Below, piece after piece: positions 2,381 through 56,387 of a stretch of 64,000 bases of DNA. The translations under genes and the position numbers were made by a program. The DNA is taken from the NCBI GenBank assembly GCA_964247055.1, contig OZ176055.1, positions 8,370,001 through 8,434,000 of the forward strand, read 5' to 3'. Under the pieces are notes generated by a model. The model was not told the origin of the DNA. It made no database searches and saw only the letters and a program-made list of their open reading frames with translations. Numbering within the stretch: the stretch's first letter is position 1; each line of letters opens with the position of its first letter. The stretch is from Paragordius varius (lineage: Eukaryota; Animalia; Nematomorpha).

Positions 2381-5300
2381 ATGATAAATTGTTACATTCA
2401 ACATTATATATGGTTTCTAACAGTTTTAAATCTGTCTACTAGTAGTGGTTTTCTAAGCAAATCAATATTTTTAACGCCAAAAAGTTTTAATGGACGTATA
2501 TCCGCAAAAGTTAAACGGATAGAACCTATACCATACAATTATCATGATTTTAATGAGACATATTATGATTATACGGACAACACGGCATACTCTGACAAAA
2601 GTGACCCAGGCGATCCCAGCAACGTAACGCATGAAGAGTTAAGTATTCGAATGGGCGTTTTTTTACCCTTTTATGGGACAAAGTACCCTTTCACGCTGGA
2701 AAAAATGTATGGGAATTTGTTGTTAGCTTATCGTCGTATAAATGAACAATTTTTTACCCGTGATATCATAGTGAAAAAGTTTTCACCATCCCTGGCACGT
2801 TACGAAGAAACGGGGAAAAGGTTACGCATAAGTTTACGACTAATTTTTGCGGATACAGCAAGTGATGGTGAACTTGCGAGCAGTTATGACGAGTGCACGG
2901 AAGATTTTGCTACGTATCATGCTGGCCGAGCTTTTTACAAATACAAAATTTCGGCCTTTCTTGGCCCATTTTGTTACTTAACGTTTGCGTCTGTGGCGTA
3001 TTTATCAACGCGTTGGAATCTCCCTATCATTACTTCCATGGGCTCGGGTTATGTCGATGCCAAGACTTGGCCTACCCTGGTCCGTATGAGTTATCGAAGT
3101 ACAGATTTAGCTGGTACCTATCTCTCCATCCTAATTTCATATGGATGGACGGATTATTCCTTTATATATGAGAATGATGCGTTTGAACGCATTGGTATAG
3201 ATGGCCTGGATTACAGTCAGTTACTCTTGCAAAATGACGAGTATGGACCAAAACATGTATTCACTATAAATACGACAAATTCACACGACGTTTTACGGGC
3301 ACTTATGAGTGGTAGTGTAAATTCTAGAGGTAAAAAGACAGTAAAATCTTAAAATTTATTTGTATTGTATGGCTATAAAGTATTATGTAAATATTTAAGC
3401 AAGTTTATATGGTGCTTGATTATTACTAGTATACAACTATTTCTTGGAGTTTTTGAATATTGATATCAAACTTTGAGTTTGTTGATAATATTAAAACACA
3501 ACTTATTTGGGAATGACACAAATTTAGAAAATGGAATTTCCTCAAACATTTTAATAGGGATTTATGTTTTATAAAAAATATTTTTGTGTCTCTTAATTTG
3601 GAATCAATGAGTTGAATTTTTGTGCATTGTTCAAAAAAGTAATTTACGACATTCGCCAAAATATAAATTTAACTTTAATTACAGTTTTCATCCTTGCATT
3701 GAACGTCAATTTGGTTAAACAATTCTTACTCAGCGCCTATGATTTGGGCATGTTAGTTAATGGGGAATATGTATTCCTAACGGTAGAACTGTGGAAATGT
3801 GAATGTTTTGGGGGCTCTTTTTTCACCACTGATGAAACTGAAAATAGAATAGATGTATACACTAAAAATTGAAATTATACGGATGAAATGTAACAACTCA
3901 AATACAATGTTTTTCTAAAAGACAACCATATACTTTTTTGTATCACGATTTTTCCTAAAAAAACCTTATAATTACATTTTTGGATAATATAATTGAGTGG
4001 CTTACCAATTTCCATCTAAAATCCCCATTTCTTAACCCAAAATGAGTTATATTTCAAATAACAACATGTAAAAAATATGGTTGTCTTTTAAAAATATTTG
4101 TTATTTTCGTTTTTACGTTTCGTCCGTATAATTTAACTGTATGTATAATAGCCAATGTTGTCTAAAAATATTTAGGATTTGCGGAAGGCCTATGAATCAT
4201 TGTTTGTTATAACACCCAAAATGATAAAATCTCATGCGGCTACCGAGTATAACCAAGTTTTAAAAAATTTCTCCCGGTCACTCAACTATTTTGGGTATAA
4301 TTTTACCTCGAATGAAGAAGTATTGCTTATATCCCATATATTAAATAACCAATTAGACTAATTTAATTGTAACTGGAATGTACGATGGTTTATACGTTTA
4401 TGCCAAAGCTCTGAAAGAACACTTAGAAAACGGGGGAACTAATTTTGAGGGCGCTGATATTGCAAAAAGAATGAAAAATCAGACAGTACAAAGTTTTACA
4501 CATAAAAAGTAATCGTTAGGTGACATTGGTAATTTTTCGATAAATGAGGACGGCGACAGAATAACCGACTATTATGTATGGGATTTTGATCCAAAACAAA
4601 AAATTTGGAAGGTATGCTTAGTTTAATATTTCCCATACATTAAACATATGCCAACGATATACGTGAAGCTAAGTTTATATTTAAACTTAAAATTAACCGA
4701 AATTCGTCTTTTTTAAGAGGTTAAAATACGGACAACAAACAATTTTAACAAAATGAAGTTGTCGCAATAAATATTGAGATGTAACAAAAACTTTTGAAAT
4801 TTATATAGACATAATTAACGGTTAGGGCATTATCAAATATTATAAAATTTATTTTAATAAACTGGGTAAAATTAAAATCATCAAATAAAAGCACGAATAT
4901 TCCGAACATATTTTCTATATTAATACTTTCTTAACATTTTATATAGATCGCTATGACCTACTATAGTGAAATGAATAATTTAGTCCCCGAAAATGTATAT
5001 ACCATACATTGGCCAATTATACACGAAGCTCCTCCTAACATACCCGTGTGTGGTTTTGGAATCGATAAAGCAGCCTGTATGCCATCTGGTAAACATTGTT
5101 TTGTTCATTCAACTGAAAATAAAACTTGATGAAACTTTAAAGCGAATTTATTAATTATTCTGGAAATAACAAAATTACCATAAATTTTGTTAAAATCTTT
5201 TGCCGGTTGTAAAAATTTAGATAAATACAGTAAAGAAACCTAAAGTCGCTTGTAATTTTCTACTTTCCCCATAAGAAAATATTTTAAAGCAATAAAAAGT

Positions 5301-8300
5301 ATTGTGCTTTTTACATTAATCAAGAAACTTTGTTGGGGCACAGCCAAAATATTGTCTTGATATCGGTAGTTATTGGTAAACATAGTTTTAAAATTCTAAT
5401 AAGTTACAATTATACTTTATTAATACTTTTGCACATGCGGAAAATTGATTAACTCCTTATAACAAAATGATTGCATAATTCATTTGGGTAAGAAATGTGA
5501 GAAAAGCATCAAGCATTCGCCTAAGTAGAATGCGCAAATTTTTTATGTTAAGTCATTAAAAAATATATTTTATTGTCGGGAACAAGGAAAATAGAATACA
5601 AGGCGGTCATACCAACGGCAACCCTCTGTTAAAATGGGGTATGGGGTTATTTAAATAAAATGGGGTAATTATCATGAATAATCAAATTCAAAAACCATTA
5701 GATTTTAGTAGGTTAAAGAATTTTATTACAAATACGCTTTGTTTTATAGATCCCATAACTTTTGTTGAATTACTGACTTATATCCTAGCATTGTTTGTCC
5801 TGGTTGGCATATTATTAGCCTACATAGCTTACAAGTTATAATTACCAAATTAATTTGACAATTTTTATTTAAATTGAAATAAGTTTTATTATTTTGCTCT
5901 TTAATAATTTTTGTGATTAACTATAATTAAAAGCAAATAATATTAAATTACATATCAAAATATCAAAAATAGGAAAATGACGCTTGAATCGGAACTCAAC
6001 AGTAGATGGTGGGAAGCCAAATTCCATGAAATTAAATACGAAAATTTAAACCCTAGCTATTTATCATTGGTCAAAAATAAAACGGCCTCAGAGGTTTTTT
6101 ACAAATCAATCTGTAGAATTGTAGACCATCATATGTTAAACGTGAAATCAAAGGAGAATACAATGTAAGCTAATAATTTTAAAATTTACTTATATCTTGG
6201 GAATTTTGGAACTTTAAGCTGTGTTTTGTATTAACAATTGCACTTTGCAAAATAAATGCAAAAAATCTAAAAGCGTTAACAACTGGTTACCAACAAAATC
6301 GTGTGATTAATTTTATTGGTACACTAATTAAGCAAGACTTTGAAAATATTCTCCACTTAAAATTAATGTGGCTATTTATAAAGTTTTAAGACAAGGTTGA
6401 ATGATAATTGGGTATTAAATTCTAAACATATCACTAAATTCGGAAAATTGTGCAAATATATAGCGATAAACATGATAGTTTCATATGTTCCCATCCACCA
6501 TTTATACAGATTTTTAAAATATTAATGATTAGCAAAAATGACAGAATATTTTAGCTGTGAATACATTAGTCTTTTTATATAAATATCATATGCTACTTTT
6601 TGTAATACTGAAGCTTGAAATTAATCAAATTTTTAAATCCAGGGACTCGTTATTATATAATTTACTACTTAAGTTGTAATGTATACAAAATTTTTTATTC
6701 AAAATAGGGCATGTTGGTCAATATCTCAACGTTAGATGTAGATTGGAATTTTGTTATCAAGCGATCCAACCTTTTGGAATTTAAATACGTAATTACTTCA
6801 CTTAATAACATAGTTTATGTCAAATCAAAAATTGAAATATTTTACAATAAATAATCAAATTTGAGAACACTTCTAAAGTCTTATATCAGAGTTTGGAATT
6901 AAATTATTGGTTGTGGTATTGAAAAATGGTTTTTTCCATAAGTCATATTTAGTTATAGCTATATTAATATATTATGGTGCATATATAAAAATACTATTTC
7001 TGATATTATCATGAAACAAATGAATTTAAACTCGAGTCAACAAATTTTAAACAATTTTAACTTCGGAAATACTTGGCATTTAAAACGGTTTCTTTAAACT
7101 AGCGGTTCAGGTTTCTGTACTTGTAATTATAACCGATTCTCAAGCCACCTTTTTAAAAATTAGAACTGTAACGGAGATTAATGGGGAGATTGTCTTTAAT
7201 TTTAAATAAAATTTATGGATTGGACATATTATATGAATCATGAAAAATTTTTAAGAATGACCGTTAACTATAATAAATTTTCGAAAATGGTTGTTTTTCA
7301 CATAAATTAATACGTTATCAATATTAATAGCACAATAGGCCGAGTATCTTAATTTTAAAAAGCTTTAACTATGGACAAAAATGGCGTTTTATCAGAATCA
7401 TAGTAGGACATATATGCGTCTTGCAAAATTCTCATTAAATGCGATATTGATAATGATACATTCAAAATCGATTCAACATTGGTGAAGGGTTTTAGTTTAA
7501 GGCTTAGACTCCTAGAGCGGTTTAAAAACTGCTAAATGAATATATCCTTTAATTTGATATTAACTAAAAGTTTAAATTCCTTTTAATATATTTGGTTTCA
7601 AAGGTTAGACCATCTCAAATTCTAACGCTAATAGTTTTAAATACGTTATTATTGTAATTTTAACGGCAAATAAAATATATGTAAATGTGAATATTAACAG
7701 ATGCGTGATATTCAGAACACCAATTTGTGCCGATTCATTGCGCTTTGCGTTGAAATGCCTCGCTTGTATGTTCTCATGGAATATTGCAGCAAAGGAACTT
7801 TACATGTAGACTTTTTTACTGATATGTTATATTACATAAGGCGAAGTTTTTTTAGGCCATAAAGTTAATAAAATTATAAATTAAAGTACCATATTTTTAG
7901 GTATATAAATAGTATGTGGTCATTTGTGAATATTTTGTTTAATTATTTTTCAATTTTTAGCCTAACAGATGGTTTTAAATTTATACTTTAATCTTTTTTA
8001 AACACTGTGAATGTGATGTCTTACAATCAGTCAATTGTTAAACGTTAACACACTATGACAAAGTTTAAATAAATTATTATAATCAAACAACTAACCAGCT
8101 CTGCCAAAAAAACCCCTTTCTATGATGCCTTATTATGCATAATAATTACTTATCATGTTTGTAACTTTTAAAAAAGCATTATTAATATCTACTTAGCAAA
8201 TTCTTGAGAACGCAGACATACAAATTGATATGGAGATGAAGATTGCCATTTTAAAAGATATTGTATCGGTAAAATTCCCTATAACCTAAAAGAAAATTTA

Positions 8301-9193
8301 ATATTTTGCAAGAAATATCATTAAAATTTTAAAGTTTATATGATTAGAATATTGGTTTATTCTTTAAAAATAGATTTCTTATTTTAATTTATCTTTTGAT
8401 GATGTTTAAAATCGTATAGGGGATGAACTATTTACACTTAACGCCAATCGAATATCATGGAAATTTGCGATCCACAGAGTGTTGGATAGACTCAAGGTTT
8501 GCGGTAAAAATTTCGGGATATGGTTTAAATTCTATCCGTATAGTAACTGCCGAAGAAACGGATAATGACATTTATTACTACAGTAAGGCGTTAAAAAAGT
8601 AGAATTATTTTTTTCTATAACCGAAAATTCGATACCTATTAAATTTACTAACTATTCGTCTTTTAAAAATCACATATATACGCGTTTTTGCCATTTGTAT
8701 TATATAACTGTGTTTAATTATTATTTATTATCGATTAGACAGATTATATGTGGCGCCAGAATTGCTAAGATCAGATTGGCATGATGGAGTAGGAACGCAA
8801 AAGGGTGATGTATACAGTTTTGCTATTATTATGCAGGAAGTCTTACTCCGCTCAAAACCGTATGAGGCACCTAAATCACTTGGAGATCCTAACTCGGTAC
8901 AAAATTACAAAGGTAATTATATTATTTTATACATGTTTTTAATAATATGTGTAGAAATCACATCTGCACAGGTATGTTGCATTTCGTAAAAACTAAGTCT
9001 GATAATAAAACAGCATTTTATCGTTTTAGATATTTCTAGCTTTATTTTGTTCCGTTTTCGATTCAAAATAATGTTTTCCTAAAATTATACTCAGGGAATT
9101 AAATATTTGGCTAGCATTTACAGTATTAACTGGAGAGATCAGGATTGTGGAAAATTTAGATTATTAATAATGTAACAATTGTACTTTCAACAG

Positions 9194-9231
<38 letters not shown>

Positions 9232-12139
9232 GGAGAAATTTTTGAATTTCTTATTACAAATAATTTAGCCAAACAATTTTAATTATGTTACTCCAATATT
9301 TATAATTATGCGTAAACTTTATAGAAATTGTTGAAAATGTACAATCACAGGGGGAAATTTGTTTCAGACCTAACCTTTATCAAAACCATCTTCAAGATAT
9401 TCCCAACGAATGGTTTGAGCTTACCAAAGCGTGTTGGGACGAGAATCCAGATTATCGCCCAAATTTTTTACATATCCAAACTGTCTTGAGGCGATTATCA
9501 AAGTTGAATCTCTCATATTTTTTAAATAATATGTTTTTGCATAAACAGATAAATTCTTCCATTTATGATTGAGCAGAGGTAAGAATGAAAATGTAGTTGA
9601 TAGTTTATTGAAACGCCTTGAGGATTACTCCAACAACTTGGAGGTTTTGGTTCAAGAACGTACAAACGCATACATAGAACAAAAACAAAGGAGTGATGAT
9701 TTACTTTATCGAATCATACCAAAGTATTTTAAAATTTTTCTTTTCAAATATAAATATGGCAGGATAAAATGATAAAGCAAACATAATTATACTTTTTTAG
9801 AATTTTTATAATGGAGAAAGGTTTTTAAGTATATATAATTATATATATAAGGTTGACTCTGGCCTATGACCATTTTCATGACCGCTTATAAAAATAACCA
9901 TTTATTGAGACACATATGATTATAATATGATATCTAATATATCTAAAAATATTAATACGAAATTTTAAAATTTGATCACTTTTTTGTATTAATAAAACAT
10001 ATTAACAGCGTTGCTTCTTTCATAAAATATTCTTACTGAATGCATCAATTCCGTTGGAATATATAAAATATTTGTAGTTTAGTTTGATTAGCTCGTTACC
10101 ATGATTAGTCTGTTAATCACTTTTGAAACTGGTCAAAAAAATTTTTAGATGAGTAATTCACTACATAGAGACTATAAAATATTTAATGCGTTTTTTGAAC
10201 TTTGTTAGATCGGTGGTAGAACGATTAAAAATGGGTTACCAAGTTTTGCCAGAAAATTATGAACAAGTCACAATATATTTCAGTGATATTGTTGGGTTTA
10301 CATCTCTCTCGGCGGAAAGTACACCATTTCAAGTTATCCTAATGCCCATAAACACATAATAATTAGATTATAAATTTTCTCAATGATCTGTACACCTGTT
10401 TTGATACTGTGCTGACATACTTTGACGTATACAAGGTATTAGGCTGCTATTGAAGTTTATAGAACCCCATTTTTCATAAAAATTTAAATTATAACGGAAC
10501 TTAAAAAGTAAAAGAATACATATTTTTTAGCCCTTGTTTGATATATATAAATGATTAAAATTGTGAAATATATAATTTATTATGATACCATTTTGCATGT
10601 ATAATCCTAATTTCGCAACCTAAAAAAGGGTATAATAAAAAACATATTTTTTTGCTTTTTATGTTTTGTCATTATAATTTTAATTTTTACTGCAATAAGG
10701 TTGAAACTATTGGGGATGCATATATGGTTGTTTCAGGATTGCCCATACGAAACAATAACCACGCCGTTTATATTGCTAGAGTTGCTTTATGCCTGCTCTA
10801 TCAAATAATGGCATTTAAAATTCGTCATAAACCAAACAAAAAGTTAAAATTACGAATCGGTCTTCATTCAGGTTGAGTGCTTTTAATATACCATCAACAC
10901 TTTTAGTTTACCCTTATATATTTAAAATGACCCTTGAACATTAATTTACCCTTAAAGATTAAAAATTCCTTATAACAATAAATTATATTTTTTTGCACTC
11001 AATTATAATTGGGTAAAATGTTTAACTTTATAAATTTTTCATCTTTTCAAAAAAAATTTCCAAAAAACTTTAAACCTCAACCCATGTTGGTTTTTTAGTT
11101 TTTATTAAAATGAGAAAAACAACAATAATATAAAACAAAACGATGATAAATTATGCTGAAATACAATATTTGTTTGTTAATCTAGCCCAGAAGCACATAA
11201 TTTATTTTTTGATTAAATATTTTACTTGGTTAAAACAACTTAATTATGCCCGAATATAGGACCAGTCGCAGCTGGAGTAGTAGGTCTTAAAATGCCTCGT
11301 TACTGTTTATTTGGACATACCGTATTTCAAGCTTCGTGCATGGAATCTAGCGGGGAAGGTTGAAAAAACAATTGGTTTATAAAAAATATTTAGGCCTTAA
11401 AATTCATGTGAGCGATATAACTAAAGCCCATTTAGACAAGTATGGAGGTTTTGTCTGTGAACCTCGTGGAAAAACTGCTATGAAGGTAGATGGAAATAAA
11501 TGGTTATATAAATAAATGATATCATATTACAGTAAAAATTGAAATTATACAAACTTAAAAAAAAGGCAACCATCCTTTTTTAAACCATAATTTTCTTATA
11601 TAAATTATTAAATACGATTGCAAAACACATAATTGATTGTGTTACCAATTACGACACTAATTCATATTTTGCAATTTACAGTATGTGTATAGCAAAGTTA
11701 TTAATTATTGCCAACTAGTAATTACAACAAAGGGCAGTATTATTGGCTAATAATAGTAAAAAGTGAAAAAGGAAACTATAGCCAATAATACTGCCCCTTG
11801 TTGTTTTTACTATTTGGCAACAATTAATAACTTTCTAGAAATGTATACTTACTCATACTGTATAACAATGCTTTATATCAAAAAAATCAAGTTTAAATAA
11901 GTACAGCTGTCTTTTTTTTGTTTTTATATTTTTACGTGTCCGTATAATTTCAAATTTCATAAACTTTTTTTTTTCAAAATTAGGATGGAACCACGGTGGA
12001 GACGTTTTGGCTTTTGGGAGAACAGGATTCCACTAAACAACACAAAATGATAACGTATGACATGAAACGGGCCAAAGCCTGTGCAAAAGCTAGTAAAATG
12101 AATATGCAAAGCGAAGCAGCAAACAAAAGTTATAATTAG
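2381..12139 (+). CDS. Receptor (transmembrane) guanylyl cyclase, natriuretic-peptide-receptor-like architecture, multi-exon; catalytic domain atypical
   Basis: Signal peptide plus ANF-receptor-type ectodomain (2381-3329 and later exons); TM exon near 5750-5840 ([22 protein letters not shown]); kinase-homology domain ([24 protein letters not shown]); hinge [21 protein letters not shown]; cyclase motifs [50 protein letters not shown]; stop TAG 12137-12139. Confidence 0.95.
3908..4097. mobile_element. Short inverted-repeat (MITE-like) element in a guanylyl cyclase intron
   Basis: ttttctaaaagacaaccatat near 3911 pairs with atatggttgtcttttaaaaa near 4076-4095. Confidence 0.5.
11679..11860. mobile_element. 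182-bp Tc1/mariner-type MITE
   Basis: TA|CAGTATG...CATACTG|TA with long imperfect internal inverted arms; lies in the last guanylyl cyclase intron. Confidence 0.85.
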
Positions 12140-13454: not shown

Positions 13455-16400
13455 ATGGGAAGGACTAAAAAATGTGTTTGCGCATGTGATAGAAAACACA
13501 ATAAGGGTATGATTGAAATTTTGCCCAGAATTTTTTTGGGTGACTTAACCGCGGCGAAAAATACAGATAAATTGAAAAAATTGGAAATTAATCACATTCT
13601 TACAATCGGTATTAATGTTTTTTAAAGTGAATAAGATACACATCCACTACCGTCCAGATTTACCAATGACTTTCATTACAAATTTATATGCGCTCAGGAT
13701 TCTATAACACAAAACCTGCTAAGTTTTTTCGATGAATGTTATGAATTTATTGAAAAAGGATCTGAAAGTATGGAAGGAAATTCTAATTCTATATTAATTC
13801 ATTGGTATGAAATTATCTTTATTACAGCAATCAGGGTATATCACGTAGCTCAACCATATTAATTGCCTATATAATGAAAAAAGAAAAGATAACCGCCGAT
13901 GAAAGTTATTTAAAAGTTTTAGCAAAAAAGAATGTATGGTTAGTCTATTTAATTATTTAGCCCAAATAACGGTTTTTTACACCAGCTAAAGCTATACGAA
14001 CGGCTTGGATGCGTCCTTAATTCTAATGATCGTTCATTTAGAGCTTACCGATTAAATCAATTTGCCAAAAATATGATAGAAACATACTCATTTTTTGGTA
14101 GTTAAATTATTTTTCTAAACTTGTAGTAATATTACCTAAGTTTTTGTATCAAAAAGGCTTATATTTTTATAAATAATTATATTATTTTTTTAATTTTTCC
14201 ATCAAACCCAATTCGATACGATTAAAGAAATTTATAATTTAGAATATGTTACCAATCTACAGCTCTATCCCATTTTACATCTCAAAATAAGAGTATATTG
14301 TTAGAAATATGGTTGTTTTTATATTTTTAATTTTTACTGTAATAATATGTTTTTTTCTAGACACAAACGATTTCCCTCATCTCCTTTTTGGGACGGATCC
14401 CTTACACAATTTAGAAACGGAAAGTGTGGAAACATCAACCCAAATTTACAAGTGTCGACAATGCAGGTTTCCATACATATTACAGTATGCATTTTAATGT
14501 ATGTTAAGTAATTTTATTGCCTGCCAAATAACATAAATGGTTTATCAAAAGCGTAAAATACCGACCCACGAAATTATTTCGTAGTACACATATGAAAGAA
14601 GATTGACGTGAGAATTAACATAGGCTTTAATTTGATGGATATTTTGTAATGTTAAATTTTGAGAATATTATAGCAAATTATGTTAACATTTGTAATATTG
14701 TTGTTACGTATTTAGATGCAGAATTTTGTGGGTTTTTATCTTTGATAAATTAATAAATAGTAAAATACGTATTTTAAGATTTTTAATGTTAATTATTCCT
14801 AAATTTAATAATAAATATTTTTCAAGATGCTAAATACGTGTATTAATGAATATTGGTATTATAATTTTATATAGTTGTTACTACTAATTAAAAAACACAG
14901 GTAAATATATTTGTAAAAATTTAAGTAGATTTTAGATTTTTGTCTTTTATGTTTTGGTTAATTATTAATAATTTTTAAGTATTTCAGACATTTTAATCAG
15001 GTAAAAATTGCGGTTTTTAACAAATTTAGTAAAAATTTAGTTTTGTTTTTTTAGGTTTTGCATTGTTTATTGTAATTAATACTACATATTTTGGACATTT
15101 TAATAAATACAGGTAAAAATTGCGGTTTTAAATAACTTTAGTAAAAATTTAGTTTTTTTGTTTTTTTATGTTTTGCATTGTTAATTGTAATTAATTACTA
15201 CATATTTTGGACATTATAATTAATACAGGTAAAAATTGCGGTTTTTAACAAAATTAGTAAAAATAAGTTTTTTTTGTTTTTTTATGTTTTGCATTATTAA
15301 TTTTAATTAATTACTACATATTTTGGACATTATAATAAATACAAAAATTGCGGTTTTTAACAAATTTAGTAAAAATTTAGTTTTTTTTGGTTTTTTAGGT
15401 TTTGCATTTTTAATTGTAATTAATTACTACATATTTCGGACATTATAATAAATACAGATAAAATTGCGGTTGTTTATATATTTGGTATTATTGTTTTTTA
15501 TTTAACATTGTTAATCGTAATTAATTCCTACATATTTGGAAATTTTAATAACAGGTGGAAATGGCGGTTTTTAACGAATTTCAAATTTAACATTTTTTGT
15601 ATTTTGTATCATTGTTATTTAATTAATTACTAAATATTTTGGACATTTAAAAAACTGGTGTAAATTGCGGTTTTTAATAAATTAAAATACAGGTAAAAAT
15701 TACTATGATTTGCGGTTTTTTAAAATATTATTTTTTTGTTTTACATTGATAACTAATATATTAAATAGAGTTAACATATCTGAGCAGGTAAAAATGCATG
15801 TTACGGTTTTATGTTTGACATTTTATTTTCCAAATCAACTATTTATATTTTACAAACACCTTGTCACCAAAGATTGAAAATAAGATCAAGATATATAAAA
15901 CATCTTTTAAAGTATCTGAATATCGCCAAATATAAATAAATTCATTTGAATTATAAATGTATAATTATACAAAATATTCATAATATTATGTTTAAAATTA
16001 GCATTCTTCTTATTGATATTAATACAGGTAATTTCTTTCTAATATTGATATATGATGCGGTGTGCGTTCATGATGATCATATCTTTGGTAGATTCTATCA
16101 ACTAAAATATAAGATAGAAAGGTATTTATTAATATATTAGAAAATGGATACCTGATTCTAGAAGTATTTTCAACATAATTTAAAATATTAGGGGCTAAAA
16201 CATTCAAAGTTTGAAAGGAAACTAAATAAGGTTGACTTGGCTTTTTAACAACTAAATTTGAAAAAATTATTTTCTTCATGATAAAAAATTAAAAAATGAT
16301 ACTTTTGTTTTTGCATTTTCGTTCTACCATCCCAAACTATAAATATGAAAAGGCTTATATGATTTCACCAATGACGTCAAATAGAAAATAGAAACAAATA

Positions 16401-19400
16401 TTTTTTTTCAAAAGCTTTGAATGCAACAGCACTCCAAAAACTAAGCAGGCAACACTATGATTGCTTTGGTGAAGGATTTCATATTTATAGTTTAAGATAA
16501 ACGAAAACGCAAAAACATAAAGTATCATTTTTGAACTTTTTATCATGAAGAAAATATTTTTTTGCAAATTTAGTTGTTAAAAAGCCAAGTCAACCTTATC
16601 TAGTTCCCTTTCAAAATTTAAATGTTTTTGCTTAGTTCCCTTTCAAACTTTGAATGTTTTAGCCCCTAATATTTAAAATTATGTTGAAAATACTTCTAGA
16701 ATCAGGTATCAATTTTCTAATATATTAATAAATACCTTCTATCTTATATTTTAGTTGATAGAATCTACCAAAGATATGATCATCATGAACGCACACCGCA
16801 TCGTATATCAATATTAGAAAGAAATTACCTGTATTAATATCAATAAGAAGAATGCTAATTTTAAACATAATATTATGAATATTTTGTATAATTATACATT
16901 TATAATTCAAATGAATTTATTTATATTTGGCGATATTCAGATACTTTAAAAGATGTTTTATATATCTTGATCTTATTTTCAATCTTTGGTGACAAGGTGT
17001 TTGTAAAATATAAATAGTTGATTTGGAAAATAAAATGTCAAACATAAAACCGTAACATGCATTTTTACCTGCTCAGATATGTTAACTCTATTTAATATAT
17101 TAGTTATCAATGTAAAACAAAAAAATAATATTTTAAAAAACCGCAAATCATAGTAATTTTTACCTGTATTTTAATTTATTAAAAACCGCAATTTACACCA
17201 GTTTTTTAAATGTCCAAAATATTTAGTAATTAATTAAATAACAATGATACAAAATACTAAAAATGTTAAATTTGAAATTCGTTAAAAACCGCCATTTTCA
17301 CCTGTAATTATTAAAATTTCCAAATATGTAGGAATTAATTACGATTAACAATGTTAAATAAAAAAACAATAATACCAAATATATAAACAACCGCAATTTT
17401 ATCTGTATTTATTATAATGTCCGAAATATGTAGTAATTAATTACAATTAAAAATGCAAAACATAAAAAACCAAAAAAAACTAAATTTTTACTAAATTTGT
17501 TAAAAACCGCAATTTTTGTATTTATTATAATGTCCAAAATATGTAGTAATTAATTAAAATTAATAATGCAAAACATAAAAAAACAAAAAAAACTTATTTT
17601 TACTAATTTTGTTAAAAACCGCAATTTTTACCTGTATTAATTATAATGTCCAAAATATGTAGTAATTAATTACAATTAACAATGCAAAACTTAAAAAACC
17701 AAAAAAACTAAATTTTTACTAAAGTTATTTAAAACCGCAATTTTTACCTGTATTTATTAAAATGTCCAAAATATGTAGTATTAATTACAATAAACAATGC
17801 AAAACCTAAAAAAACAAAACTAAATTTTTACTAAATTTGTTAAAAACCGCAATTTTTACCTGATTAAAATGTCTGAAATACTTAAAAATTATTAATAATT
17901 AACCAAAACATAAAAGACAAAAATCTAAAATCTACTTAAATTTTTACAAATATATTTACCTGTGTTTTTTAATTAGTAGTAACAACTATATAAAATTATA
18001 ATACCAATATTCATTAATACACGTATTTAGCATCTTGAAAAATATTTATTATTAAATTTAGGAATAATTAACATTAAAAATCTTAAAATACGTATTTTAC
18101 TATTTATTAATTTATCAAAGATAAAAACCCTCAAAATTCCGCATCTAAATACGTAACAACAATATTACAAATGTTAACATAATTTGCTATAATATTCTCA
18201 AAATTTAACATTACAAAATATCCATCAAATTAAAGCCTATGTTAATTCTCACGTCAATCTTCTTTCATATGTGTACTACGAAATAATTTCGTGGGTCAGT
18301 ATTTTACGCTTTTGATAAACCATTTATGTTATTTGTCAGGCAATAAAATTACTTAACATACATTAAAATGCATACTCTATTTTAACTTTTATTATAGGCG
18401 GGACCTGTTTTACGACACTAGTGTTTTGTATCATACAAAGGGATTGGGATATTTGAAATTTAAATACGATGATATCTCACCACCAGGTAATAATTTAATG
18501 TCCATATTTATTACAAATTTTTAGAAAGGCATTTCTTTAAATGCCAATGATTAGTTAAAAAATAGATAATAATCCAAAAAATATGTAATACCCAAAATTA
18601 TTTTTTCATTTAATCATAAATTGTATACACGATTTATCGACATTATTGTAATTAATGTTGGGTCTGACTAGTTCTTACGTGATAGTTATCGCCTAAATAC
18701 AGGGGTGTCAAACACACACATATTAGCGGCTGATTTGATAATTTTTAGTTTTTTTTATTTTGAGTCGAAAAATCGTAAATTTTGATTGAAATAACATTTT
18801 TTAGGCGACTTTTGCGCAGTGAAAAGTGTGTCGGACATCCCTGGCCTAAATTAACAGCCTTGTGTGCATGATGATCAACATTAGATTTAATTTTATTTAA
18901 AAAGCGGTGCGAAGTAGGGCAAACCACATATACTGAAATTGATACTGCTACCGATTTAACTAAAATTTATAATTTGGAATTGTAAACAATGAGTTATATT
19001 TTAAAAAAATCAAAATATACAAAGTTTTTTAATTTTAAATTTTTTTGTTAAATTTTTATTGTGTGAATTATGAACGCCTTGTTTGACTTTAATTCTGTAG
19101 ATACTGGCCAACAAAGTGAGGATGAAAAAGTTTGCAAACAATTTTTATTCATCGAACCCGTAACTTGGATGCGAGATCAAATTAGTCAAATTTCAGGGAA
19201 ATTACATTGCCCCAAATGCCAAGCTAAAATAGGCACATACAATTGGTCAGGTTAGTTATTATCTTAATTCTAGGCATCTTAATAGATGAATGTTTATTTC
19301 GATTAATTCATCTTCGATTTTTGTAAAAACCTAAAATAATTTCTATGTTTACTATTTATGCAAGTTTATTAAATAATGTAAATTATAAAAATGTAAATGC

Positions 19401-19595: not shown

Positions 19596-19686
19596 TTATA
19601 AAGGGGAAGTTTGCGGTTGTAAAACGTGGATTACACCATCGTTCAATATCCAAAATGCCAAAATAGATAGGAATACTGTATCTTAA
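13455..19686 (+). CDS. DUSP12: Dual-specificity phosphatase 12 / YVH1 with C-terminal zinc-binding domain, multi-exon
   Basis: MIEILPRIFLGD; active-site HCNQGISRS (rebuilt across a 23-nt intron); PNNGFLHQLKLYE; YKCRQCRR; FIEPVTWM; GKLHCPKCQAKIGTYNWSGEVCGCKTWITPSF; stop 19684-19686. Start may be 13455 or 13509. Confidence 0.95.
14483..18377. mobile_element. 3.9-kb foldback DNA element with about 1.87-kb inverted arms and TA target-site duplication, inside a DUSP12 intron
   Basis: Left arm 14483-16350 is the near-exact reverse complement of 16477-18377 (few substitutions, one 33-bp duplication in the right arm); 126-bp spacer; termini TA|CAGTATGCATT... and ...AATGCATACTC|TA; no coding capacity seen. 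Confidence 0.93.
14990..15720 (+). repeat. About 115-bp tandem subrepeats within the left foldback arm (mirror copy near 17100-17870)
   Basis: Recurrent caggtaaaaattgcggtttttaac...ttttggacatt units, roughly 6-7 diverging copies. Confidence 0.85.
18700..18843. mobile_element. hAT-type MITE in a DUSP12 intron
   Basis: Ends caggggtgtcaaacac / gtgtcggacatccctg; flanked by gcctaaat on both sides (8-bp TSD-like, one extra base on the left). Confidence 0.65.
19551..19593. repeat. (TA)n microsatellite; similar tracts near 9197-9225, 46165-46203, 46819-46867 and 63602-63627
   Basis: Direct dinucleotide run. Confidence 0.95.
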
Positions 19687-27601: not shown

Positions 27602-28264
27602 ATTTATAAACTATTAGTATAATAAATATTATATTACCTTAATTTTCTAGAATAAACTTGTAAGGTACCGATTTGTGGTATCAATTTGTCTTTTAAGCTA
27701 CCGATTTGTGGTATTAACTTGGTTTTTGATAAATGACAGTAGTAGTAGGAAGCAAAGTGTATAATCATATGATATAAATTCGAAAAAAAATAAATATTTT
27801 TAAAATAAAAATAAAAAATTTTAATTTAAAATTTAAACGGATAAAAAAATTTATTTGTATTAAAATTTTTTTTTTATATAATCGTGAAAAAGCGGGACAT
27901 TTTAAAACGTAGCGGGAGGCGGGACAAAGTGTGAAAAAGCGGGGTCCCGCCAAAAGCGGGACGTCTGGTCACCTTAATTATGCCTAAAAATAGTATTAAG
28001 TAGGCTTCAACAAAATTTTGCTAAAAATTAAGTATTTTTTAAAAGTATGCATATTATTAAAAATATTTTTTTAATGTCAAAATTTAGCATATATTTAAAA
28101 TTCTTATCGCGCCGATCATTATTACGTTTATTTTAACACATGCATATTGGGGTAACTAAATATCCCAGACAATATTTAAGTTGATATTTTTAAAAAACTA
28201 CTAAAAGAAACGGTTTCAATATAAATATATGCTTCTCCTATTAAAAATTATATAGATAAGTGTA

Positions 28265-31200
28265 AATCTATATATTTATAAAAATGGAAAATGCTGGCTT
28301 TGTGATCGGTCCGGAAAACCGGTAGACTCATTCAAATCCAAATGTCGAAAAAATATAATCATTAATAAATGCCCTGACAATAGCTTCGCCCTTTTTTGAA
28401 TTAGGTTCCCAGTTCGGGCCCACCTGGTGTGAAAAACGGGTTTTTTTGGTCCATAAAAAGTTTCTCTTCGAGACAGTTTTCCAGAGAACGTGTTGGACCA
28501 TTCAATTTTAAATATAATTTTTATTTTCGATTGCGCCGAGGATAGTCGGCTCGAGGCCCTCTTTTTACCCGCTCCCCCCGTAAAATGTCATTTATTCAAA
28601 AAAAAAACAAAGTCTACAAAAATAATTTTTTAATTCTATTTTTTGCCCAAGGTATGAGACCGTAAAAATTCAATAAGGATTTAGGTATTCCCTGTTAAAA
28701 GGCAAAAATTTTAGTCAAGCGTTTGTTTGATGATAACTGCTGAGTAAGGAGCTACCCGCGAAAAATTGACTCGTCATATCGAAGTAGCATGATTTTGGGG
28801 CTAAATTTCAGAAAACCTATCAAGCCATATGAGTTAAATAGCTTCTTAAAGTATTACCCGTAAAAAGTCAAAAATTTTAGTCGAGCGGATTATTTGAATT
28901 AGCCGTTAAATAGGCCCTTTACTCCCTAAAAAATGCGTTATCGTTGCATTATTATTTAGTTTTGAAGCCATTTTTCCATAAAGTATTAGGAATGAACGGT
29001 GATTCCAGGTATAAAGGCAAATTTTTTTATCTAACTACATTTTTATATTGGCCTGTGAGTAGTGGGTCGTACCCGCCTACAACTGCGGCATCATATCGAT
29101 ACAGCTTGCCTTTGGAGCCAAATTTCAGAAAACTTATGAGACTATGTGATTCATTTTACTACAAGCCGCATAATAAAATTGTTTATAAAATCAAATATGC
29201 CCCTTACCCCCAGAAGTCCGAAGGATTTCGAGCTGAGTAGCAGCACGAGATTTACGCTAGTATTTAAATAAGAATTAGTTTAGAAAAAAAGTTACGTAAC
29301 TACTTCGACTGCATTTTTATTTTACAACATTTTTGCAAAATATCGTGTTTTTTATTTAAATTACATTTTATATTTATATGTACAGAAAAATGGTATATTG
29401 TGCGTTATTTTTATATTTAACTTATGTCCACTTGTCATGTTGGCTATTTGCATATGGGTTTTACTTCTTATTGAGTAATATTTTTTATATATTTTTTTCG
29501 GTTCATTAATGTTATATAAGTGCGAATTTTTGTGGTTTTAATTCATTCCATATTTTTATATATATTTAATTTAACAAGGCTGGGCTATCCAACTATCGCA
29601 ATTCGAATCGAAAAACTTAAATGAATGTGTTGTATACAAGTGTTAAAAGATCTATCCCATTGAAGCGAGAAAAAATTTATGACTTTCGGACCCCACATCT
29701 AAAAATTAAAATATTTTAAAAGCATGATAATCCTGATATATTATGTTATCAGAATAGATATATATTTCTAATGGTCATTTTTTTGTGGACACAGTGTTAT
29801 TTCATCAGGTAGTTTTTTGTGGACACTGTGTAATATTGCAAATTATCTAAAATGTTTTCACTGCAAAAATGGGAAGACTAAAAAATATCCTGATAAACAT
29901 ATGTCTGATAGATAAATGTAACAGGATTATCATTGTTCTTTTGGATTTTGGACCTGATTGATTTAAAAAAAATATTTACTCTTGTGTGGTATTTTCTCTG
30001 TATCAAAAAACCGCCATTGTGCAGTTTCTGCTAAATTTTGTAAAAACTAAATACATAATTCCAAAATGTATAATTGAATCATATCATATACATTTAAAAG
30101 GCAAAATAATATTAAAATAATAATTTTTTAGTTGTAGAATCCGAAAGTCTCAAATTTTTGGGCCCTTCTAAAATGGGCTATTATAACACAAAAATGCCGA
30201 GGTGTTGCGAGAAAAATTTATAAAACATGTAAAATTATGACATCATAAAGAATCAATTTTAAAACCGCCATACTTTCTTGATATTGGAATTAGCCAATAG
30301 AACCGTGTTTATTGTATTTCGGAGCGGTGACGGTAGAAAAATATTTACAGATATTTACAAATACACATTTTCTTTACATGTCGCCAAAATCGAGTGGTAT
30401 AAATATATCCTGTAGAAATAAATAGAAAATGAATCAGGATTATCTTCATGCTTTTGGTTTTGGCCCTTACTGATTTAAAAAAGTTATTTACACTAAAAGC
30501 CTTATATCTGATAATAGCAAAGCTTGCGCACATTGAATTGTGATGAAACCTAAATGCTTAATTGTGATAAATATCACTAAAAAATCTCATAATCTATATA
30601 TTTATAAAAATGGAAAATGCTGGCTTTGTGATCTGGTACAGGAAAAACGGTACACCCATTCAAATACAAACTTCGAAAAAATATAATCATTAATGAATGC
30701 CCCGACAATAGCTTCGCCCTTTTTTTGAAATAGGCCCCCAGTTCGGGCCCACCCCGTGTGAAAAACGGTTTTTTTTGAAAACAGAAGTCCACAAAAATCG
30801 TGTCTTTGAGACAATTTTCCGGAGAACGTGTTGGACCATTCAATTTTAAATATGATTTTTGTTTACTTATTTTCGATTGCGCTGAACATAGCCGAGCCAC
30901 ATTTTTGATTTAGGCCGTCTTTTTACCCGCTCCCCCCGTGAAATGCCACCTTTTTCAAAAAACAAAGTCCACAAAAATAATTTTTTAAATCGATTTTTCG
31001 CCCAAGGTATGAGACCGTAAAAATTCAATAAGGATTTAGGTATTCCCTGTTAAAAGGCAAAAATTTTAGTCAAGCGTTTGTTTGATGATAACTGCTGAGT
31101 AAGGAGCTACCCGCGAAAAATTGACTCGTCATATCGAAGTAGCATGATTTTGGGGCTAAATTTCAGAAAACCTATCAAGCCATATGAGTTAAATAGCTTC

Positions 31201-34200
31201 TTAAAGTATTACCCGTAAAAAGTCAAAAATTTTAGTCGAGCGGATTATTTGAATTAGCCGTTAAATAGGCCCTTTACTCCCTAAAAAATGCGTTATCGTT
31301 GCATTATTATTTAGTTTTGAAGCCATTTTTCCATAAAGTATTAGGAATGAACGGTGATTCCAGGTATAAAGGCAAATTTTTTTATCTAACTACATTTTTA
31401 TATTGGCCTGTGAGTAGTGGGTCGTACCCGCCTACAACTGCGGCATCATATCGATACAGCTTGCCTTTGGAGCCAAATTTCAGAAAACTTATGAGACTAT
31501 GTGATTCATTTTACTACATGCCGCATAATAAAATTGTTTATAAAATCAAATATGCCCCTTACCCCCAGAAGTCCGAAGGATTTCGAGCTGAGTAGCAGCA
31601 CGAGATTTACGCTAGTATTTAAATAAGAATTAGTTTAGAAAAAAAGTTACGTAACTACTTCGACTGCATTTTTATTTTACAACATTTTTGCAAAATATCG
31701 TGTTTTTTATTTAAATTACATTTTATATTTATATGTACAGAAAAATGGTATATTGTGCGTTATTTTTATATTTAACTTATGTCCACTTGTCATGTTGGCT
31801 ATTTGCATATGGGTTTTACTTCTTATTGAGTAATATTTTTTATATATTTTTTTCGGTTCATTAATGTTATATAAGTGCGAATTTTTGTGGTTTTAATTCA
31901 TTCCATATTTTTATATATATTTAATTTAACAAGGCTGGGCTATCCAACTATCGCAATTCGAATCGAAAAACTTAAATGAATGTGTTGTATACAAGTGTTA
32001 AAAGATCTATCCCATTGAAGCGAGAAAAAATTTATGACTTTCGGACCCCACATCTAAAAATTAAAATATTTTAAAAGCATGATAATCCTGATATATTATG
32101 TTATCAGAATAGATATATATTTCTAATGGTCATTTTTTTGTGGACACAGTGTTATTTCATCAGGTAGTTTTTTGTGGACACTGTGTAATATTGCAAATTA
32201 TCTAAAATGTTTTCACTGCAAAAATGGGAAGACTAAAAAATATCCTGATAAACATATGTCTGATAGATAAATGTAACAGGATTATCATTGTTCTTTTGGA
32301 TTTTGGACCTGATTGATTTAAAAAAAATATTTACTCTTGTGTGGTATTTTCTCTGTATCAAAAAACCGCCATTGTGCAGTTTCTGCTAAATTTTGTAAAA
32401 ACTAAATACATAATTCCAAAATGTATAATTGAATCATATCATATACATTTAAAAGGCAAAATAATATTAAAATAATAATTTTTTAGTTGTAGAATCCGAA
32501 AGTCTCAAATTTTTGGGCCCTTCTAAAATGGGCTATTATAACACAAAAATGCCGAGGTGTTGCGAGAAAAATTTATAAAACATGTAAAATTATGACATCA
32601 TAAAGAATCAATTTTAAAACCGCCATACTTTCTTGATATTGGAATTAGCCAATAGAACCGTGTTTATTGTATTTCGGAGCGGTGACGGTAGAAAAATATT
32701 TACAGATATTTACAAATACACATTTTCTTTACATGTCGCCAAAATCGAGTGGTATAAATATATCCTGTAGAAATAAATAGAAAATGAATCAGGATTATCT
32801 TCATGCTTTTGGTTTTGGCCCTTACTGATTTCAAAAAGTTATTTACACTAAAAGCCTTATATCTGATAATAGCAAAGCTTGCGCACATTGAATTGTGATG
32901 AAACCTAAATGCTTAATTGTGATAAATATCACTAAAAAATCTCATAATCTATATATTTATAAAAATGGAAAATGCTGGCTTTGTGATCTGGTACAGGAAA
33001 AACGGTACACCCATTCAAATACAAACTTCGAAAAAATATAATCATTAATGAATGCCCCGACAATAGCTTCGCCCTTTTTTTGAAATAGGCCCCCAGTTCG
33101 GGCCCACCCCGTGTGAAAAACGGTTTTTTTTTGAAAACAGAAGTCCACAAAAATCGTGTCTTTGAGACAATTTTCCGGAGAACGTGTTGGACCATTCAAT
33201 TTTAAATATGATTTTTGTTTACTTATTTTCGATTGCGCTGAACATAGCCGAGCCACATTTTTGATTTAGGCCGTCTTTTTACCCGCTCCCCCCGTGAAAT
33301 GCCACCTTTTTCAAAAAACAAAGTCCACAAAAATAATTTTTTAAATCGATTTTTCGCCCTAGGTATGAGACCGTAAAAATTCAATATGGATTACACGTTT
33401 TCCCTGTTAAAAAGTAAAAATTTTAGTCTACCGTTTGTTTGATGATAGCTGCTGGGTAAGGAGCTACCCGCTAAAAACTGATTTTTCATATAACTTTGTG
33501 ATCTGTTTCCGGAAAACCGGTGAACCCAATCAAATCCAAACATCGAAAAAATATAATCATCAATGAATGCCTCGACAATAGCTTCGCCATTTTTTTGAAA
33601 TAGGCCCCCAGTTCGGGCCCACCCCGTGTAAAAAACGGGTATTTTTGAGACAATTTTCCGGAGAACGTGTTGGGCCATTCAATTTCAAATATGATTTTTG
33701 TTTACTTATTTTTGATCGCGCCGAACATAGTCGGCCCGCTTTTTTTATTTAGGCCCTCTTTATACCCGCTACCCCCGTAAAATGCCACTTTTTTCAAAAA
33801 AACTAAGTTCATCAAAATATTTTTTTGAATGTATTTTTCGCACAAGGTATGAAACCGTAGGGATTCGATAAGGATTCCAGCTAATCCCTGTTAAAAGCCA
33901 AAAATTTTACTCAGGCGTTTTTTTAATGATAGCTGCTGGGTAGGGAGATAACCGCTAAAAACCGACCCGTCATATCGTTTTTGCGTGCTTTTGGGGTTAA
34001 ATTTCAGAAAACTGATCGGGCCATAGCTCAATAGCTTCTAAAAATATCACCCGCAACAAGGTGAAAATTTACATCGTGCGGTTATTTTTAAATTAGTCCT
34101 TAATTTAGCCGTACACGCCCTGATAAATCCGCCCCCATATAATGATTTTTTACCTTTTTGACAATTTATTCAAAAACAAATAAGAGCATATGGAACTAAT

Positions 34201-43978: not shown

Positions 43979-56387
<12,409 letters not shown>

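What the first reader, a model, noticed from the sequence alone, without database searches (positions are those of the whole stretch)
14467..18397. A 3.9-kb foldback transposon appears to have landed in a 34-nt micro-intron, and its hairpin would restore the splice-site spacing
Seen: the DUSP12 intron 14467-18397 (3,931 nt) is almost entirely the foldback 14483-18377. Removing the element and one TA leaves gtttccatacatatta + ttttaacttttattatag = 34 nt, the same size class as the other micro-introns here. The near-identical 1.87-kb arms would fold so the donor lies 16 nt and the acceptor 20 nt from the stem base. Inference: in a genome whose spliceosome is tuned to 20-35-nt introns, palindromic elements may be tolerated because RNA folding makes the intron structurally short. 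The same pre-mRNA would also be a very long dsRNA (ADAR or Dicer substrate). Foldbacks with long TIRs and TA targets are known (C. elegans Tc6); I do not know this splicing-rescue role as a described system.
Basis: partly seen in the sequence, partly recalled or inferred. Interest (0 to 1): 0.82.

Follow-up and report, generated by a model that had tools for sequence, protein, structure and literature searches.

The report
Foldback transposon inside a tiny intron
A real 3.9-kb hairpin-shaped jumping gene landed in a 34-base intron of an animal's DUSP12 gene, but the same genome routinely carries long unstructured introns, so it looks like an ordinary tolerated intron insertion, not a new splicing trick.

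Summary
Window 14483-18377 is a near-perfect palindrome with two ~1.87-kb arms about 99% complementary. It is flanked by TA on both sides and has CAGT-type tips. It belongs to a non-coding family of about 100 copies. It sits between the donor and the branch-like motif of a GT-AG intron in a single-copy DUSP12/YVH1 gene. Removing it and one TA leaves 34 nt.

The RNA would fold (-2681 kcal/mol, 96% paired) and bring the splice sites within about 20 steps. But the premise that this spliceosome handles only 20-35-nt introns fails:
- DUSP12 itself has introns of 263, 614 and 353 nt.
- The neighbouring guanylyl cyclase gene has nine introns of 156-614 nt.
- A squalene epoxidase intron 30 kb away is 3,897 nt and filled by a LINE.
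- None of these is palindromic or more structured than shuffled sequence.

Other copies of the family sit in longer introns, up to 250-300 nt from the exons.

Best reading: a Tc1/mariner-type foldback insertion that left the splice signals intact and turned a micro-intron into a long one. The hairpin is a by-product. RNA evidence could not be obtained. Earlier notes of this scan describe the two-class intron system and another intronic foldback elsewhere in this genome.

The parts
14467..18397 (+). Intron 5 of the DUSP12/YVH1-like gene: 3,931 nt, GT...AG, phase 2 (split codon AG|G = Arg)
   Evidence: The frame closes only with this junction. The CxxC-R|R-x-L junction has the same shape as Yvh1 residues 230-240.
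14483..18377 (.). Non-autonomous foldback transposon: 3,895 bp, 21% GC, no coding capacity
   Evidence: Family of about 100 copies.
14481..14482 (.). Left TA of the target-site duplication
   Evidence: TA on both sides in 15 of 16 copies.
18378..18379 (.). Right TA of the target-site duplication
14483..16350 (.). Left arm (~1.87 kb). Carries 7 sense-strand AG|GTAA donor-like motifs.
16351..16477 (.). Degenerate centre (loop) of the palindrome
   Evidence: only short, broken matching blocks here.
16478..18377 (.). Right arm, reverse complement of the left arm (~99% in the outer 1.7 kb)
14998..15683 (.). Tandem 116-nt subrepeats in the left arm (about 6 copies)
17173..17867 (.). Mirror-image 116-nt subrepeat array in the right arm
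18380..18386 (+). Branch-point-like TTTTAAC, just downstream of the insertion and 11 nt from the acceptor; left intact by the insertion
   Evidence: Read from the sequence. Branch-point use is inferred.
13455..13608 (+). DUSP12 exon 1
13636..13804 (+). DUSP12 exon 2 (DSPc profile 37-79), preceded by a 27-nt intron
13828..13938 (+). DUSP12 exon 3 (DSPc profile 82-113). The preceding 23-nt intron splits the active-site Cys codon.
13961..14097 (+). DUSP12 exon 4, preceded by a 22-nt intron
14361..14466 (+). DUSP12 exon 5 (ends in the CxxC motif), preceded by a 263-nt unstructured, unique-sequence intron
18398..18486 (+). DUSP12 exon 6
19101..19250 (+). DUSP12 exon 7 (zinc-binding domain; matches Yvh1 275-319), preceded by a 614-nt intron holding old repeat fragments
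19604..19686 (+). DUSP12 exon 8 with stop codon, preceded by a 353-nt unique-sequence intron
48990..52886 (+). Natural control: a 3,897-nt GT-AG, phase-0 intron of squalene epoxidase holding a sense-strand LINE (about 49204-52399), with no inverted repeats

Best explanation
A non-autonomous, Tc1/mariner-type foldback transposon (TA target, CAGT tips, arms built partly of 116-nt tandem repeats) inserted at a TA inside a 34-nt micro-intron of the single-copy DUSP12/YVH1 gene. The insertion point lies between the donor and the branch-like motif, so the 5' splice site, the branch region and the 3' splice site are all untouched. The intron simply moved from the short class of this genome's two intron classes to the long class, and is removed by ordinary GT-AG splicing, like the many other long introns of this animal.

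The arms will almost certainly pair in the pre-mRNA, which brings the splice sites together and hides decoy signals. That pairing is a by-product of the element's shape, not a requirement for tolerance.

Shown: the anatomy, the family, the target site, the intact reading frame, and the abundance of long unstructured introns.
Inferred: that the intron is spliced, and that the hairpin is dispensable.
For: - Anatomy and TA duplication.
- Family of about 100 copies, none coding.
- Coherent 8-exon model with homology on both sides of the insertion.
- The gene is single-copy, with no second copy of either flank.
- Long unstructured introns in three conserved genes: DUSP12 introns of 263, 614 and 353 nt; guanylyl cyclase introns of 156-614 nt (nine of them); a squalene epoxidase intron of 3,897 nt. 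None is palindromic. Fold-energy z-scores run from -3.65 to +1.83, and 10 of 12 lie within 2 s.d. of shuffled sequence. Predicted end distance equals that of shuffles.
- Four of 16 family copies lie in or next to genes, and only this one is in a micro-intron.
- The 3.9-kb LINE intron has a predicted end distance of 12 steps against 20 for the foldback. This fits the general result that the ends of large RNAs are close whatever the sequence (PMC3017586).
Against: - No RNA evidence for the 14466/18398 junction could be reached.
- The donor GTTTCC is the least consensus-like of the 19 donors tabulated. It could depend on a nearby acceptor.
- No non-palindromic insertion into a former micro-intron was seen in my small sample. 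The LINE's host intron was already about 700 nt.
- The insertion could be polymorphic, so its tolerance is not proven.
- The long-intron sample covers three genes in one window.
Confidence: 0.7

Rival explanations
1. Hairpin rescue. Micro-intron splice signals work only at short range. The foldback is tolerated because its arms pair, restoring about 34 nt of effective spacing and hiding decoy donors. A non-palindromic insert at the same place would kill the gene.
For: - Predicted fold of -2681 kcal/mol, 96% paired, splice sites about 20 steps apart.
- Weak-looking donor GTTTCC.
- Seven AG|GTAA decoy donors in the sense strand of the left arm, four times the window's density, which the duplex would mask.
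- Structure-bridged introns exist elsewhere: yeast zipper stems (PMC2536676), zebrafish AC-GT introns (PMC4691745), euglenid introns (PMC11282704).
Against: - Thirteen other long introns in the window, including three in the same gene and one of 3,897 nt, lack any bridging structure.
- Other family copies sit 50-300 nt from exons, where the hairpin cannot restore micro spacing.
- None of 15 other copies is in a micro-intron.
- Predicted end distance is just as short for unstructured introns.
Confidence: 0.1
2. A harmful or unfixed allele. The insertion is fairly recent and perhaps polymorphic. The intron is spliced poorly or the transcript is degraded, and the animal survives on the other allele or on reduced DUSP12.
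For: - The copy is 97.8-98% identical to its nearest sampled relatives, and its arms are 99% alike.
- Twelve AATAAA signals and seven donor-like motifs lie on the sense strand.
Against: - All eight exons are intact in a single-copy, conserved gene.
- The arms have 27 differences and the right tip is mutated, which suggests some residence time, though these differences could have been inherited from the donor copy.
- No empty-site haplotig exists in the assembly.
Confidence: 0.15
3. An assembly or library artefact: a chimeric palindromic read built into the assembly.
For: Long perfect palindromes can arise from missed adapters or from amplification chimeras.
Against: - TA duplication and conserved tips shared with about 100 dispersed copies.
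- The arms differ at 27 positions plus indels, and the centre is degenerate.
- Copies range from 1.8 to 5.9 kb.
Confidence: 0.02

Closest known systems
C. elegans Tc6 and other long-TIR Tc1/mariner-derived elements (Dreyfus & Emmons 1991, cited in PMC3814204)
   Same: Non-coding, almost wholly two long inverted arms, TA target, Tc1-like CAGT tips, multi-copy.
   Different: Here the element is larger (1.8-5.9 kb) and its arms contain 116-nt tandem subrepeats. No matching transposase was identified here.
Drosophila Foldback (FB) elements and the nematode Tm1 Mutator/Foldback family (PMC3169594)
   Same: Long arms built partly of tandem repeats, variable size, hairpin-forming.
   Different: The target duplication here is TA, which points to Tc1/mariner and not to the FB or Mutator-type superfamilies. 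The 9-bp FB duplication is recalled from my own knowledge.
Structure-bridged spliceosomal introns: yeast RPS17B zipper stems (PMC2536676) and zebrafish (AC)m-(GT)n introns (PMC4691745)
   Same: An intronic stem brings the 5' splice site close to the branch point or 3' splice site.
   Different: In those systems dependence on the stem was shown by mutation, and the structure marks a whole class of introns. Here the dependence is untested, and the other long introns are not bridged.
Transposon-derived introns: introners, Fritillaria MITE introns, euglenid nonconventional introns (review PMC11282704)
   Same: A DNA transposon with inverted ends lies inside a gene and leaves with the intron. In euglenids, pairing brings the intron ends together.
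   Different: Those elements create the intron and supply or co-opt the splice sites. Here the intron already existed, and both splice sites lie in host sequence 16 and 20 nt outside the element.
Intronic inverted-repeat dsRNA as an editing or RNAi substrate (e.g. paired Alus, PMC526178)
   Same: A transcribed intronic inverted repeat gives a long intramolecular duplex.
   Different: This is a single 1.87-kb near-perfect duplex. Dicer is present, but no ADAR deaminase domain was detected in this genome (absence is not proven).

Membership tests
Tc1/mariner-superfamily non-autonomous foldback (long-TIR, Tc6-like) | TA target-site duplication | tested here: met
   TA on both sides in 15 of 16 full copies, including this one. 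206 TA-flanked tips genome-wide against 0 for the control.
Tc1/mariner-superfamily non-autonomous foldback (long-TIR, Tc6-like) | Terminal 5'-CAGT...ACTG-3' inverted tips | tested here: met
   This copy's right tip reads ...ACTC, one substitution away.
Tc1/mariner-superfamily non-autonomous foldback (long-TIR, Tc6-like) | Dispersed multi-copy family without coding capacity | tested here: met
Tc1/mariner-superfamily non-autonomous foldback (long-TIR, Tc6-like) | A DD(E/D) transposase-bearing partner with the same tips | not tested
Earlier scan notes report Tc1/IS630-type transposases in other foldback families of this genome; I did not test this.
Drosophila-type FB elements | Arms composed of tandem subrepeats | tested here: met
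   116-nt period, about 6 copies per arm.
Drosophila-type FB elements | Longer (9-bp) target duplication (recalled from my own knowledge) | tested here: not met
   The duplication is TA only.
Structure-dependent (bridged) introns | A stem that brings the 5' splice site close to the branch point or 3' splice site | tested here: met
   Prediction only: 955 long-range pairs, end distance 20.
Structure-dependent (bridged) introns | Splicing depends on the stem | not testable with these tools
   Needs minigenes or RNA-seq.
Structure-dependent (bridged) introns | Bridging structure marks the class of long introns | tested here: not met
   None of 13 other long introns has bridging repeats. Fold-energy z-scores range from -3.65 to +1.83, and 10 of 12 lie within 2 s.d. 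of shuffled sequence.
Introner / transposon-created introns | The element creates the intron and supplies or co-opts a splice site | tested here: not met
   Donor and acceptor lie 16 and 20 nt outside the element. Removing the element leaves a complete 34-nt GT-AG intron.
Ciliate germline IES (TA-bounded, Tc1-like ends, tiny introns) | Ciliate genome with reassigned stop codons | tested here: not met
   DUSP12 reads with the standard code, has no in-frame TAA or TAG, and ends at TAA. The window holds animal-type genes: ANF-receptor guanylyl cyclase and LINE/LTR elements.

The most novel reading that the evidence does not exclude
In this genome with two intron classes, micro-introns may be recognised by a short-range mode that tolerates weak donors such as GTTTCC. 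Only hairpin-forming elements could then survive inside them, because pairing restores the short geometry and masks the seven decoy donors in the left arm. Foldbacks would be the one kind of transposon able to colonise micro-introns. My sample contains no non-palindromic insertion into a former micro-intron, so this is not excluded.
Probability: 0.08. Interest if true: 0.75.

Novelty: new member of a known kind. Interest (0 to 1): 0.3.

Why it matters
By itself this is an ordinary event: a DNA transposon sitting in an intron. Its value is as a natural experiment. One insertion has turned a 34-nt intron into a 3.9-kb one without touching the splice signals, in an animal that keeps a discrete class of 22-35-nt introns beside ordinary long ones. 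A 3.9-kb unstructured LINE intron lies 30 kb away as a built-in control. RNA-seq across these two junctions, plus arm-deletion minigenes, would show whether micro-intron signals work at long range. That would tell us whether the two intron classes are recognised differently.

Tried and rejected
- Assembly artefact: rejected. The copy has a TA duplication and shares its tips with about 100 copies, and its arms differ at 27 sites.
- Ciliate germline IES: considered because of the TA bounds, Tc1-like ends and tiny introns. Rejected on the standard genetic code and the animal-type genes.
- Empty-site allele or paralogue: neither flank has a second copy in the assembly.
- Sister-species orthologue: the word search with the exon-7 frame found nothing. 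Full-length DUSP12 proteins are out of reach from single exons because of the length limits. All protein evidence here is exon by exon and by reference.
- Exons 5 and 6 alone gave no match among solved structures; at 34 and 29 residues they are too short.
- Exact-protein look-up of the neighbouring DHDPS-like gene, to name the organism: not on record. I did not verify the 'horsehair-worm relative' label from earlier notes.
- Rfam: no RNA family in or around the element.
- ADAR: no A_deamin domain was found, but the exon-wise search cannot show absence.
- The inverted tips I saw by eye in intron 6 were not recovered by the repeat finder. They are about 15 of 18 matches at best.
Full report
**Observation.** The palindrome is real. 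The repeat finder gives arms 14481-15499 / 17361-18379 (1019 nt, 99% complementary) and 15546-16119 / 16737-17310 (574 nt, 99%), plus further collinear blocks. A global alignment of the left half against the reverse complement of the right half gives 1884 matches, 27 mismatches and a few small indels, with a degenerate centre at about 16350-16478. The element proper is 14483-18377, with TA on each side. Its tips are CAGTATGC... and ...GCATACTC. Each arm holds about six 116-nt tandem subrepeats.

**Gene model.** I rebuilt the DUSP12 gene exon by exon. It has eight exons:
- 13455-13608
- 13636-13804
- 13828-13938
- 13961-14097
- 14361-14466
- 18398-18486
- 19101-19250
- 19604-19686

Together they give 999 nt. 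Every intron is GT...AG, and the frame closes on a stop codon. Exons 2 and 3 match the dual-specificity phosphatase profile collinearly (positions 37-79, then 82-113), and a 23-nt intron splits the catalytic Cys codon. Exon 7 matches the yeast Yvh1 zinc domain (residues 275-319, E 2.5e-7). The junction across the foldback reads CxxC-R|R-x-L, the same shape as Yvh1 230-240 shown in that output. Taking out the element and one TA leaves exactly 34 nt. I searched the exons separately and by reference.

**Not an artefact.** The first 520 nt of the arm finds 366 candidate places in the 110.5-Mb assembly, and the 40 that were scored are 93-100% identical. A 28-nt tip pattern including the TA occurs 206 times, against 0 for the reversed control. 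Sixteen full copies of 1.8-5.9 kb all have the same tips, and 15 of 16 have TA/TA flanks. None has an open frame of note. This is therefore a non-autonomous, Tc1/mariner-style foldback family of about 100 elements.

**Age of this copy.** Its arms are 99.0% alike, and its nearest sampled relative is 97.8-98% identical. Within-copy arm identity (median 97.8%) exceeds between-copy identity (95.8%) across the family. It also means that arm identity does not date the insertion.

**Does the hairpin form, and does it bridge?** In prediction, yes. The intron folds to -2681 kcal/mol (-0.68 per nt) with 96% of bases paired and 955 pairs between the first and last quarters. The shortest path from donor to acceptor is 20 steps. 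The insertion lies between the donor and a TTTTAAC branch-like motif at 18380-18386, so the donor, branch region and acceptor are all intact.

That premise fails in this very window.
- DUSP12's seven introns are 27, 23, 22, 263, 3931, 614 and 353 nt.
- I mapped the neighbouring receptor guanylyl cyclase with full-length homologues from the exhaustive protein search. Its introns are about 355, 502, 335, 614, 156, 412, 485, 264 and 388 nt, beside short ones of about 27-63, about 41-44, 34 and 35 nt. A 1.5-kb stretch (6170-7689) has room for only about one small exon and holds no inverted repeats.
- None of the twelve 156-614-nt introns is a palindrome. Their best inverted repeats are 8-42 nt and local.
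- Their fold-energy z-scores against shuffles run from -3.65 to +1.83, and 10 of 12 lie within 2 standard deviations. Their predicted end-to-end distances match those of shuffled sequence.
- DUSP12 introns 4 and 7 are unique sequence. Intron 6 holds old, diverged repeat fragments.

**A natural control.** Squalene epoxidase, 30 kb downstream, has an intron at 48990-52886. It is 3,897 nt, GT...AG and phase 0, and it joins ...VLVYK to ISSRYTR... with no residues missing relative to the family profile. It contains a sense-strand LINE at about 49204-52399, with endonuclease and reverse-transcriptase frames. That LINE is 98-100% identical to many other 3.2-kb copies. The intron has no inverted repeat of 25 nt or more and folds like ordinary RNA: -0.18 kcal/mol per nt and 23 long-range pairs. 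Its predicted end distance is nevertheless 12 steps, shorter than the foldback's 20. This fits the general result that the ends of large RNAs are close whatever their sequence (PMC3017586). Caveat: this LINE is very young, so its tolerance is no better proven than the foldback's. Even so, the intron was already about 700 nt of unique sequence before the LINE arrived.

**Where the rest of the family sits.** Among 16 full copies, only the DUSP12 copy has a reconstructed empty site that reads as a GT...AG intron of 18-60 nt between open frames; none of the 15 others does. Pfam on the flanking frames shows three other copies in or beside genes:
- One lies between Sec1-family exons (profile 197-239 | element | 246-288), roughly 250-300 nt from each exon.
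- One lies between DNA-polymerase subunit-B exons, with the nearest open frames 52-56 nt away.
- One lies within 41 nt of a ZP-N exon.

Intronic copies are therefore common. In these cases the hairpin cannot restore micro-intron spacing. Any insertion into a 34-nt intron is bound to abut both splice sites, so that part of the observation carries no extra information.

**Side claims.** A Dicer dimerisation domain is present in the genome at C4:9128416. No ADAR deaminase domain was detected, but the exon-wise search cannot prove absence. No Rfam family lies in the element. The left arm carries seven sense-strand AG|GTAA motifs, four times the window's density, and the right arm carries none. The duplex would mask them. 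This is the most plausible real benefit of the palindrome, but it is speculation.

**What is known.** Long-armed Tc1/mariner derivatives such as Tc6 are established (Dreyfus & Emmons 1991, as cited in PMC3814204). Stems that shorten the effective intron are established in yeast (PMC2536676) and zebrafish (PMC4691745). Euglenid and other transposon-derived introns pair their ends (PMC11282704). The proposed mechanism is therefore a variant of known ones. Here it is neither required by the data nor testable without RNA.

**Earlier notes of this scan.** They describe the same two-class intron system in other windows (s1-261268, s1-313170, s1-298866) and another Tc1/mariner foldback in a VPS41 intron, said to be polymorphic (s1-243090). 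My measurements in this window agree with the first. I did not test the second, nor the 'horsehair-worm relative' label.

**Verdict.** The insertion-into-a-micro-intron reading is supported. The splicing-rescue inference is not supported, because its premise fails, although it is not strictly excluded. This is a new member of a known kind, and it is useful mainly as a natural experiment.

Noticed in passing
window 48990-52886: A 3,897-nt squalene epoxidase intron holds a sense-strand LINE (about 49204-52399) that is 98-100% identical to many other 3.2-kb copies, so the LINE family looks currently active. In this copy the endonuclease and RT frames share one reading frame but are separated by a single stop at 50268-50270.
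   Followed up: partly
window 14899-16026: Seven AG|GTAA donor-like motifs lie on the sense strand of the foldback's left arm, five of them as AG|GTAAAA and several sitting in the 116-nt subrepeats. The right arm has none. The density is four times that of the window.
   Followed up: partly
L032:2003-6321, L045:2003-6249, L034:2003-6502: Three other copies of the same foldback family lie in introns of a Sec1-family gene and a DNA-polymerase subunit-B gene, and within 41 nt of a ZP-N/cuticlin exon.
   Followed up: partly
window 18487-19100: DUSP12 intron 6 contains two old dispersed repeat families (intron positions about 202-316 and 442-572, 74-92% identical to many loci). It also holds a possible small element with imperfect CAGGGGTGTC-type inverted tips at about 18700-18846, which the repeat finder did not confirm.
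   Followed up: partly
window 28200-33700: Identical 108-residue open frames at 28914-29237 and 31269-31592, together with similar minus-strand frames, point to a tandem duplication with a period of about 2.35 kb.
   Followed up: no
whole genome (G000): No ADAR-type deaminase domain (PF02137) was detected, while a Dicer dimerisation domain is present at C4:9128416-9128589. The negative result is weak, because the search works exon by exon.
   Followed up: partly
window 2381-11509: The receptor guanylyl cyclase gene spreads about 1,000 codons over about 9 kb and has both intron classes: about 27-44 nt and 156-614 nt.
   Followed up: yes
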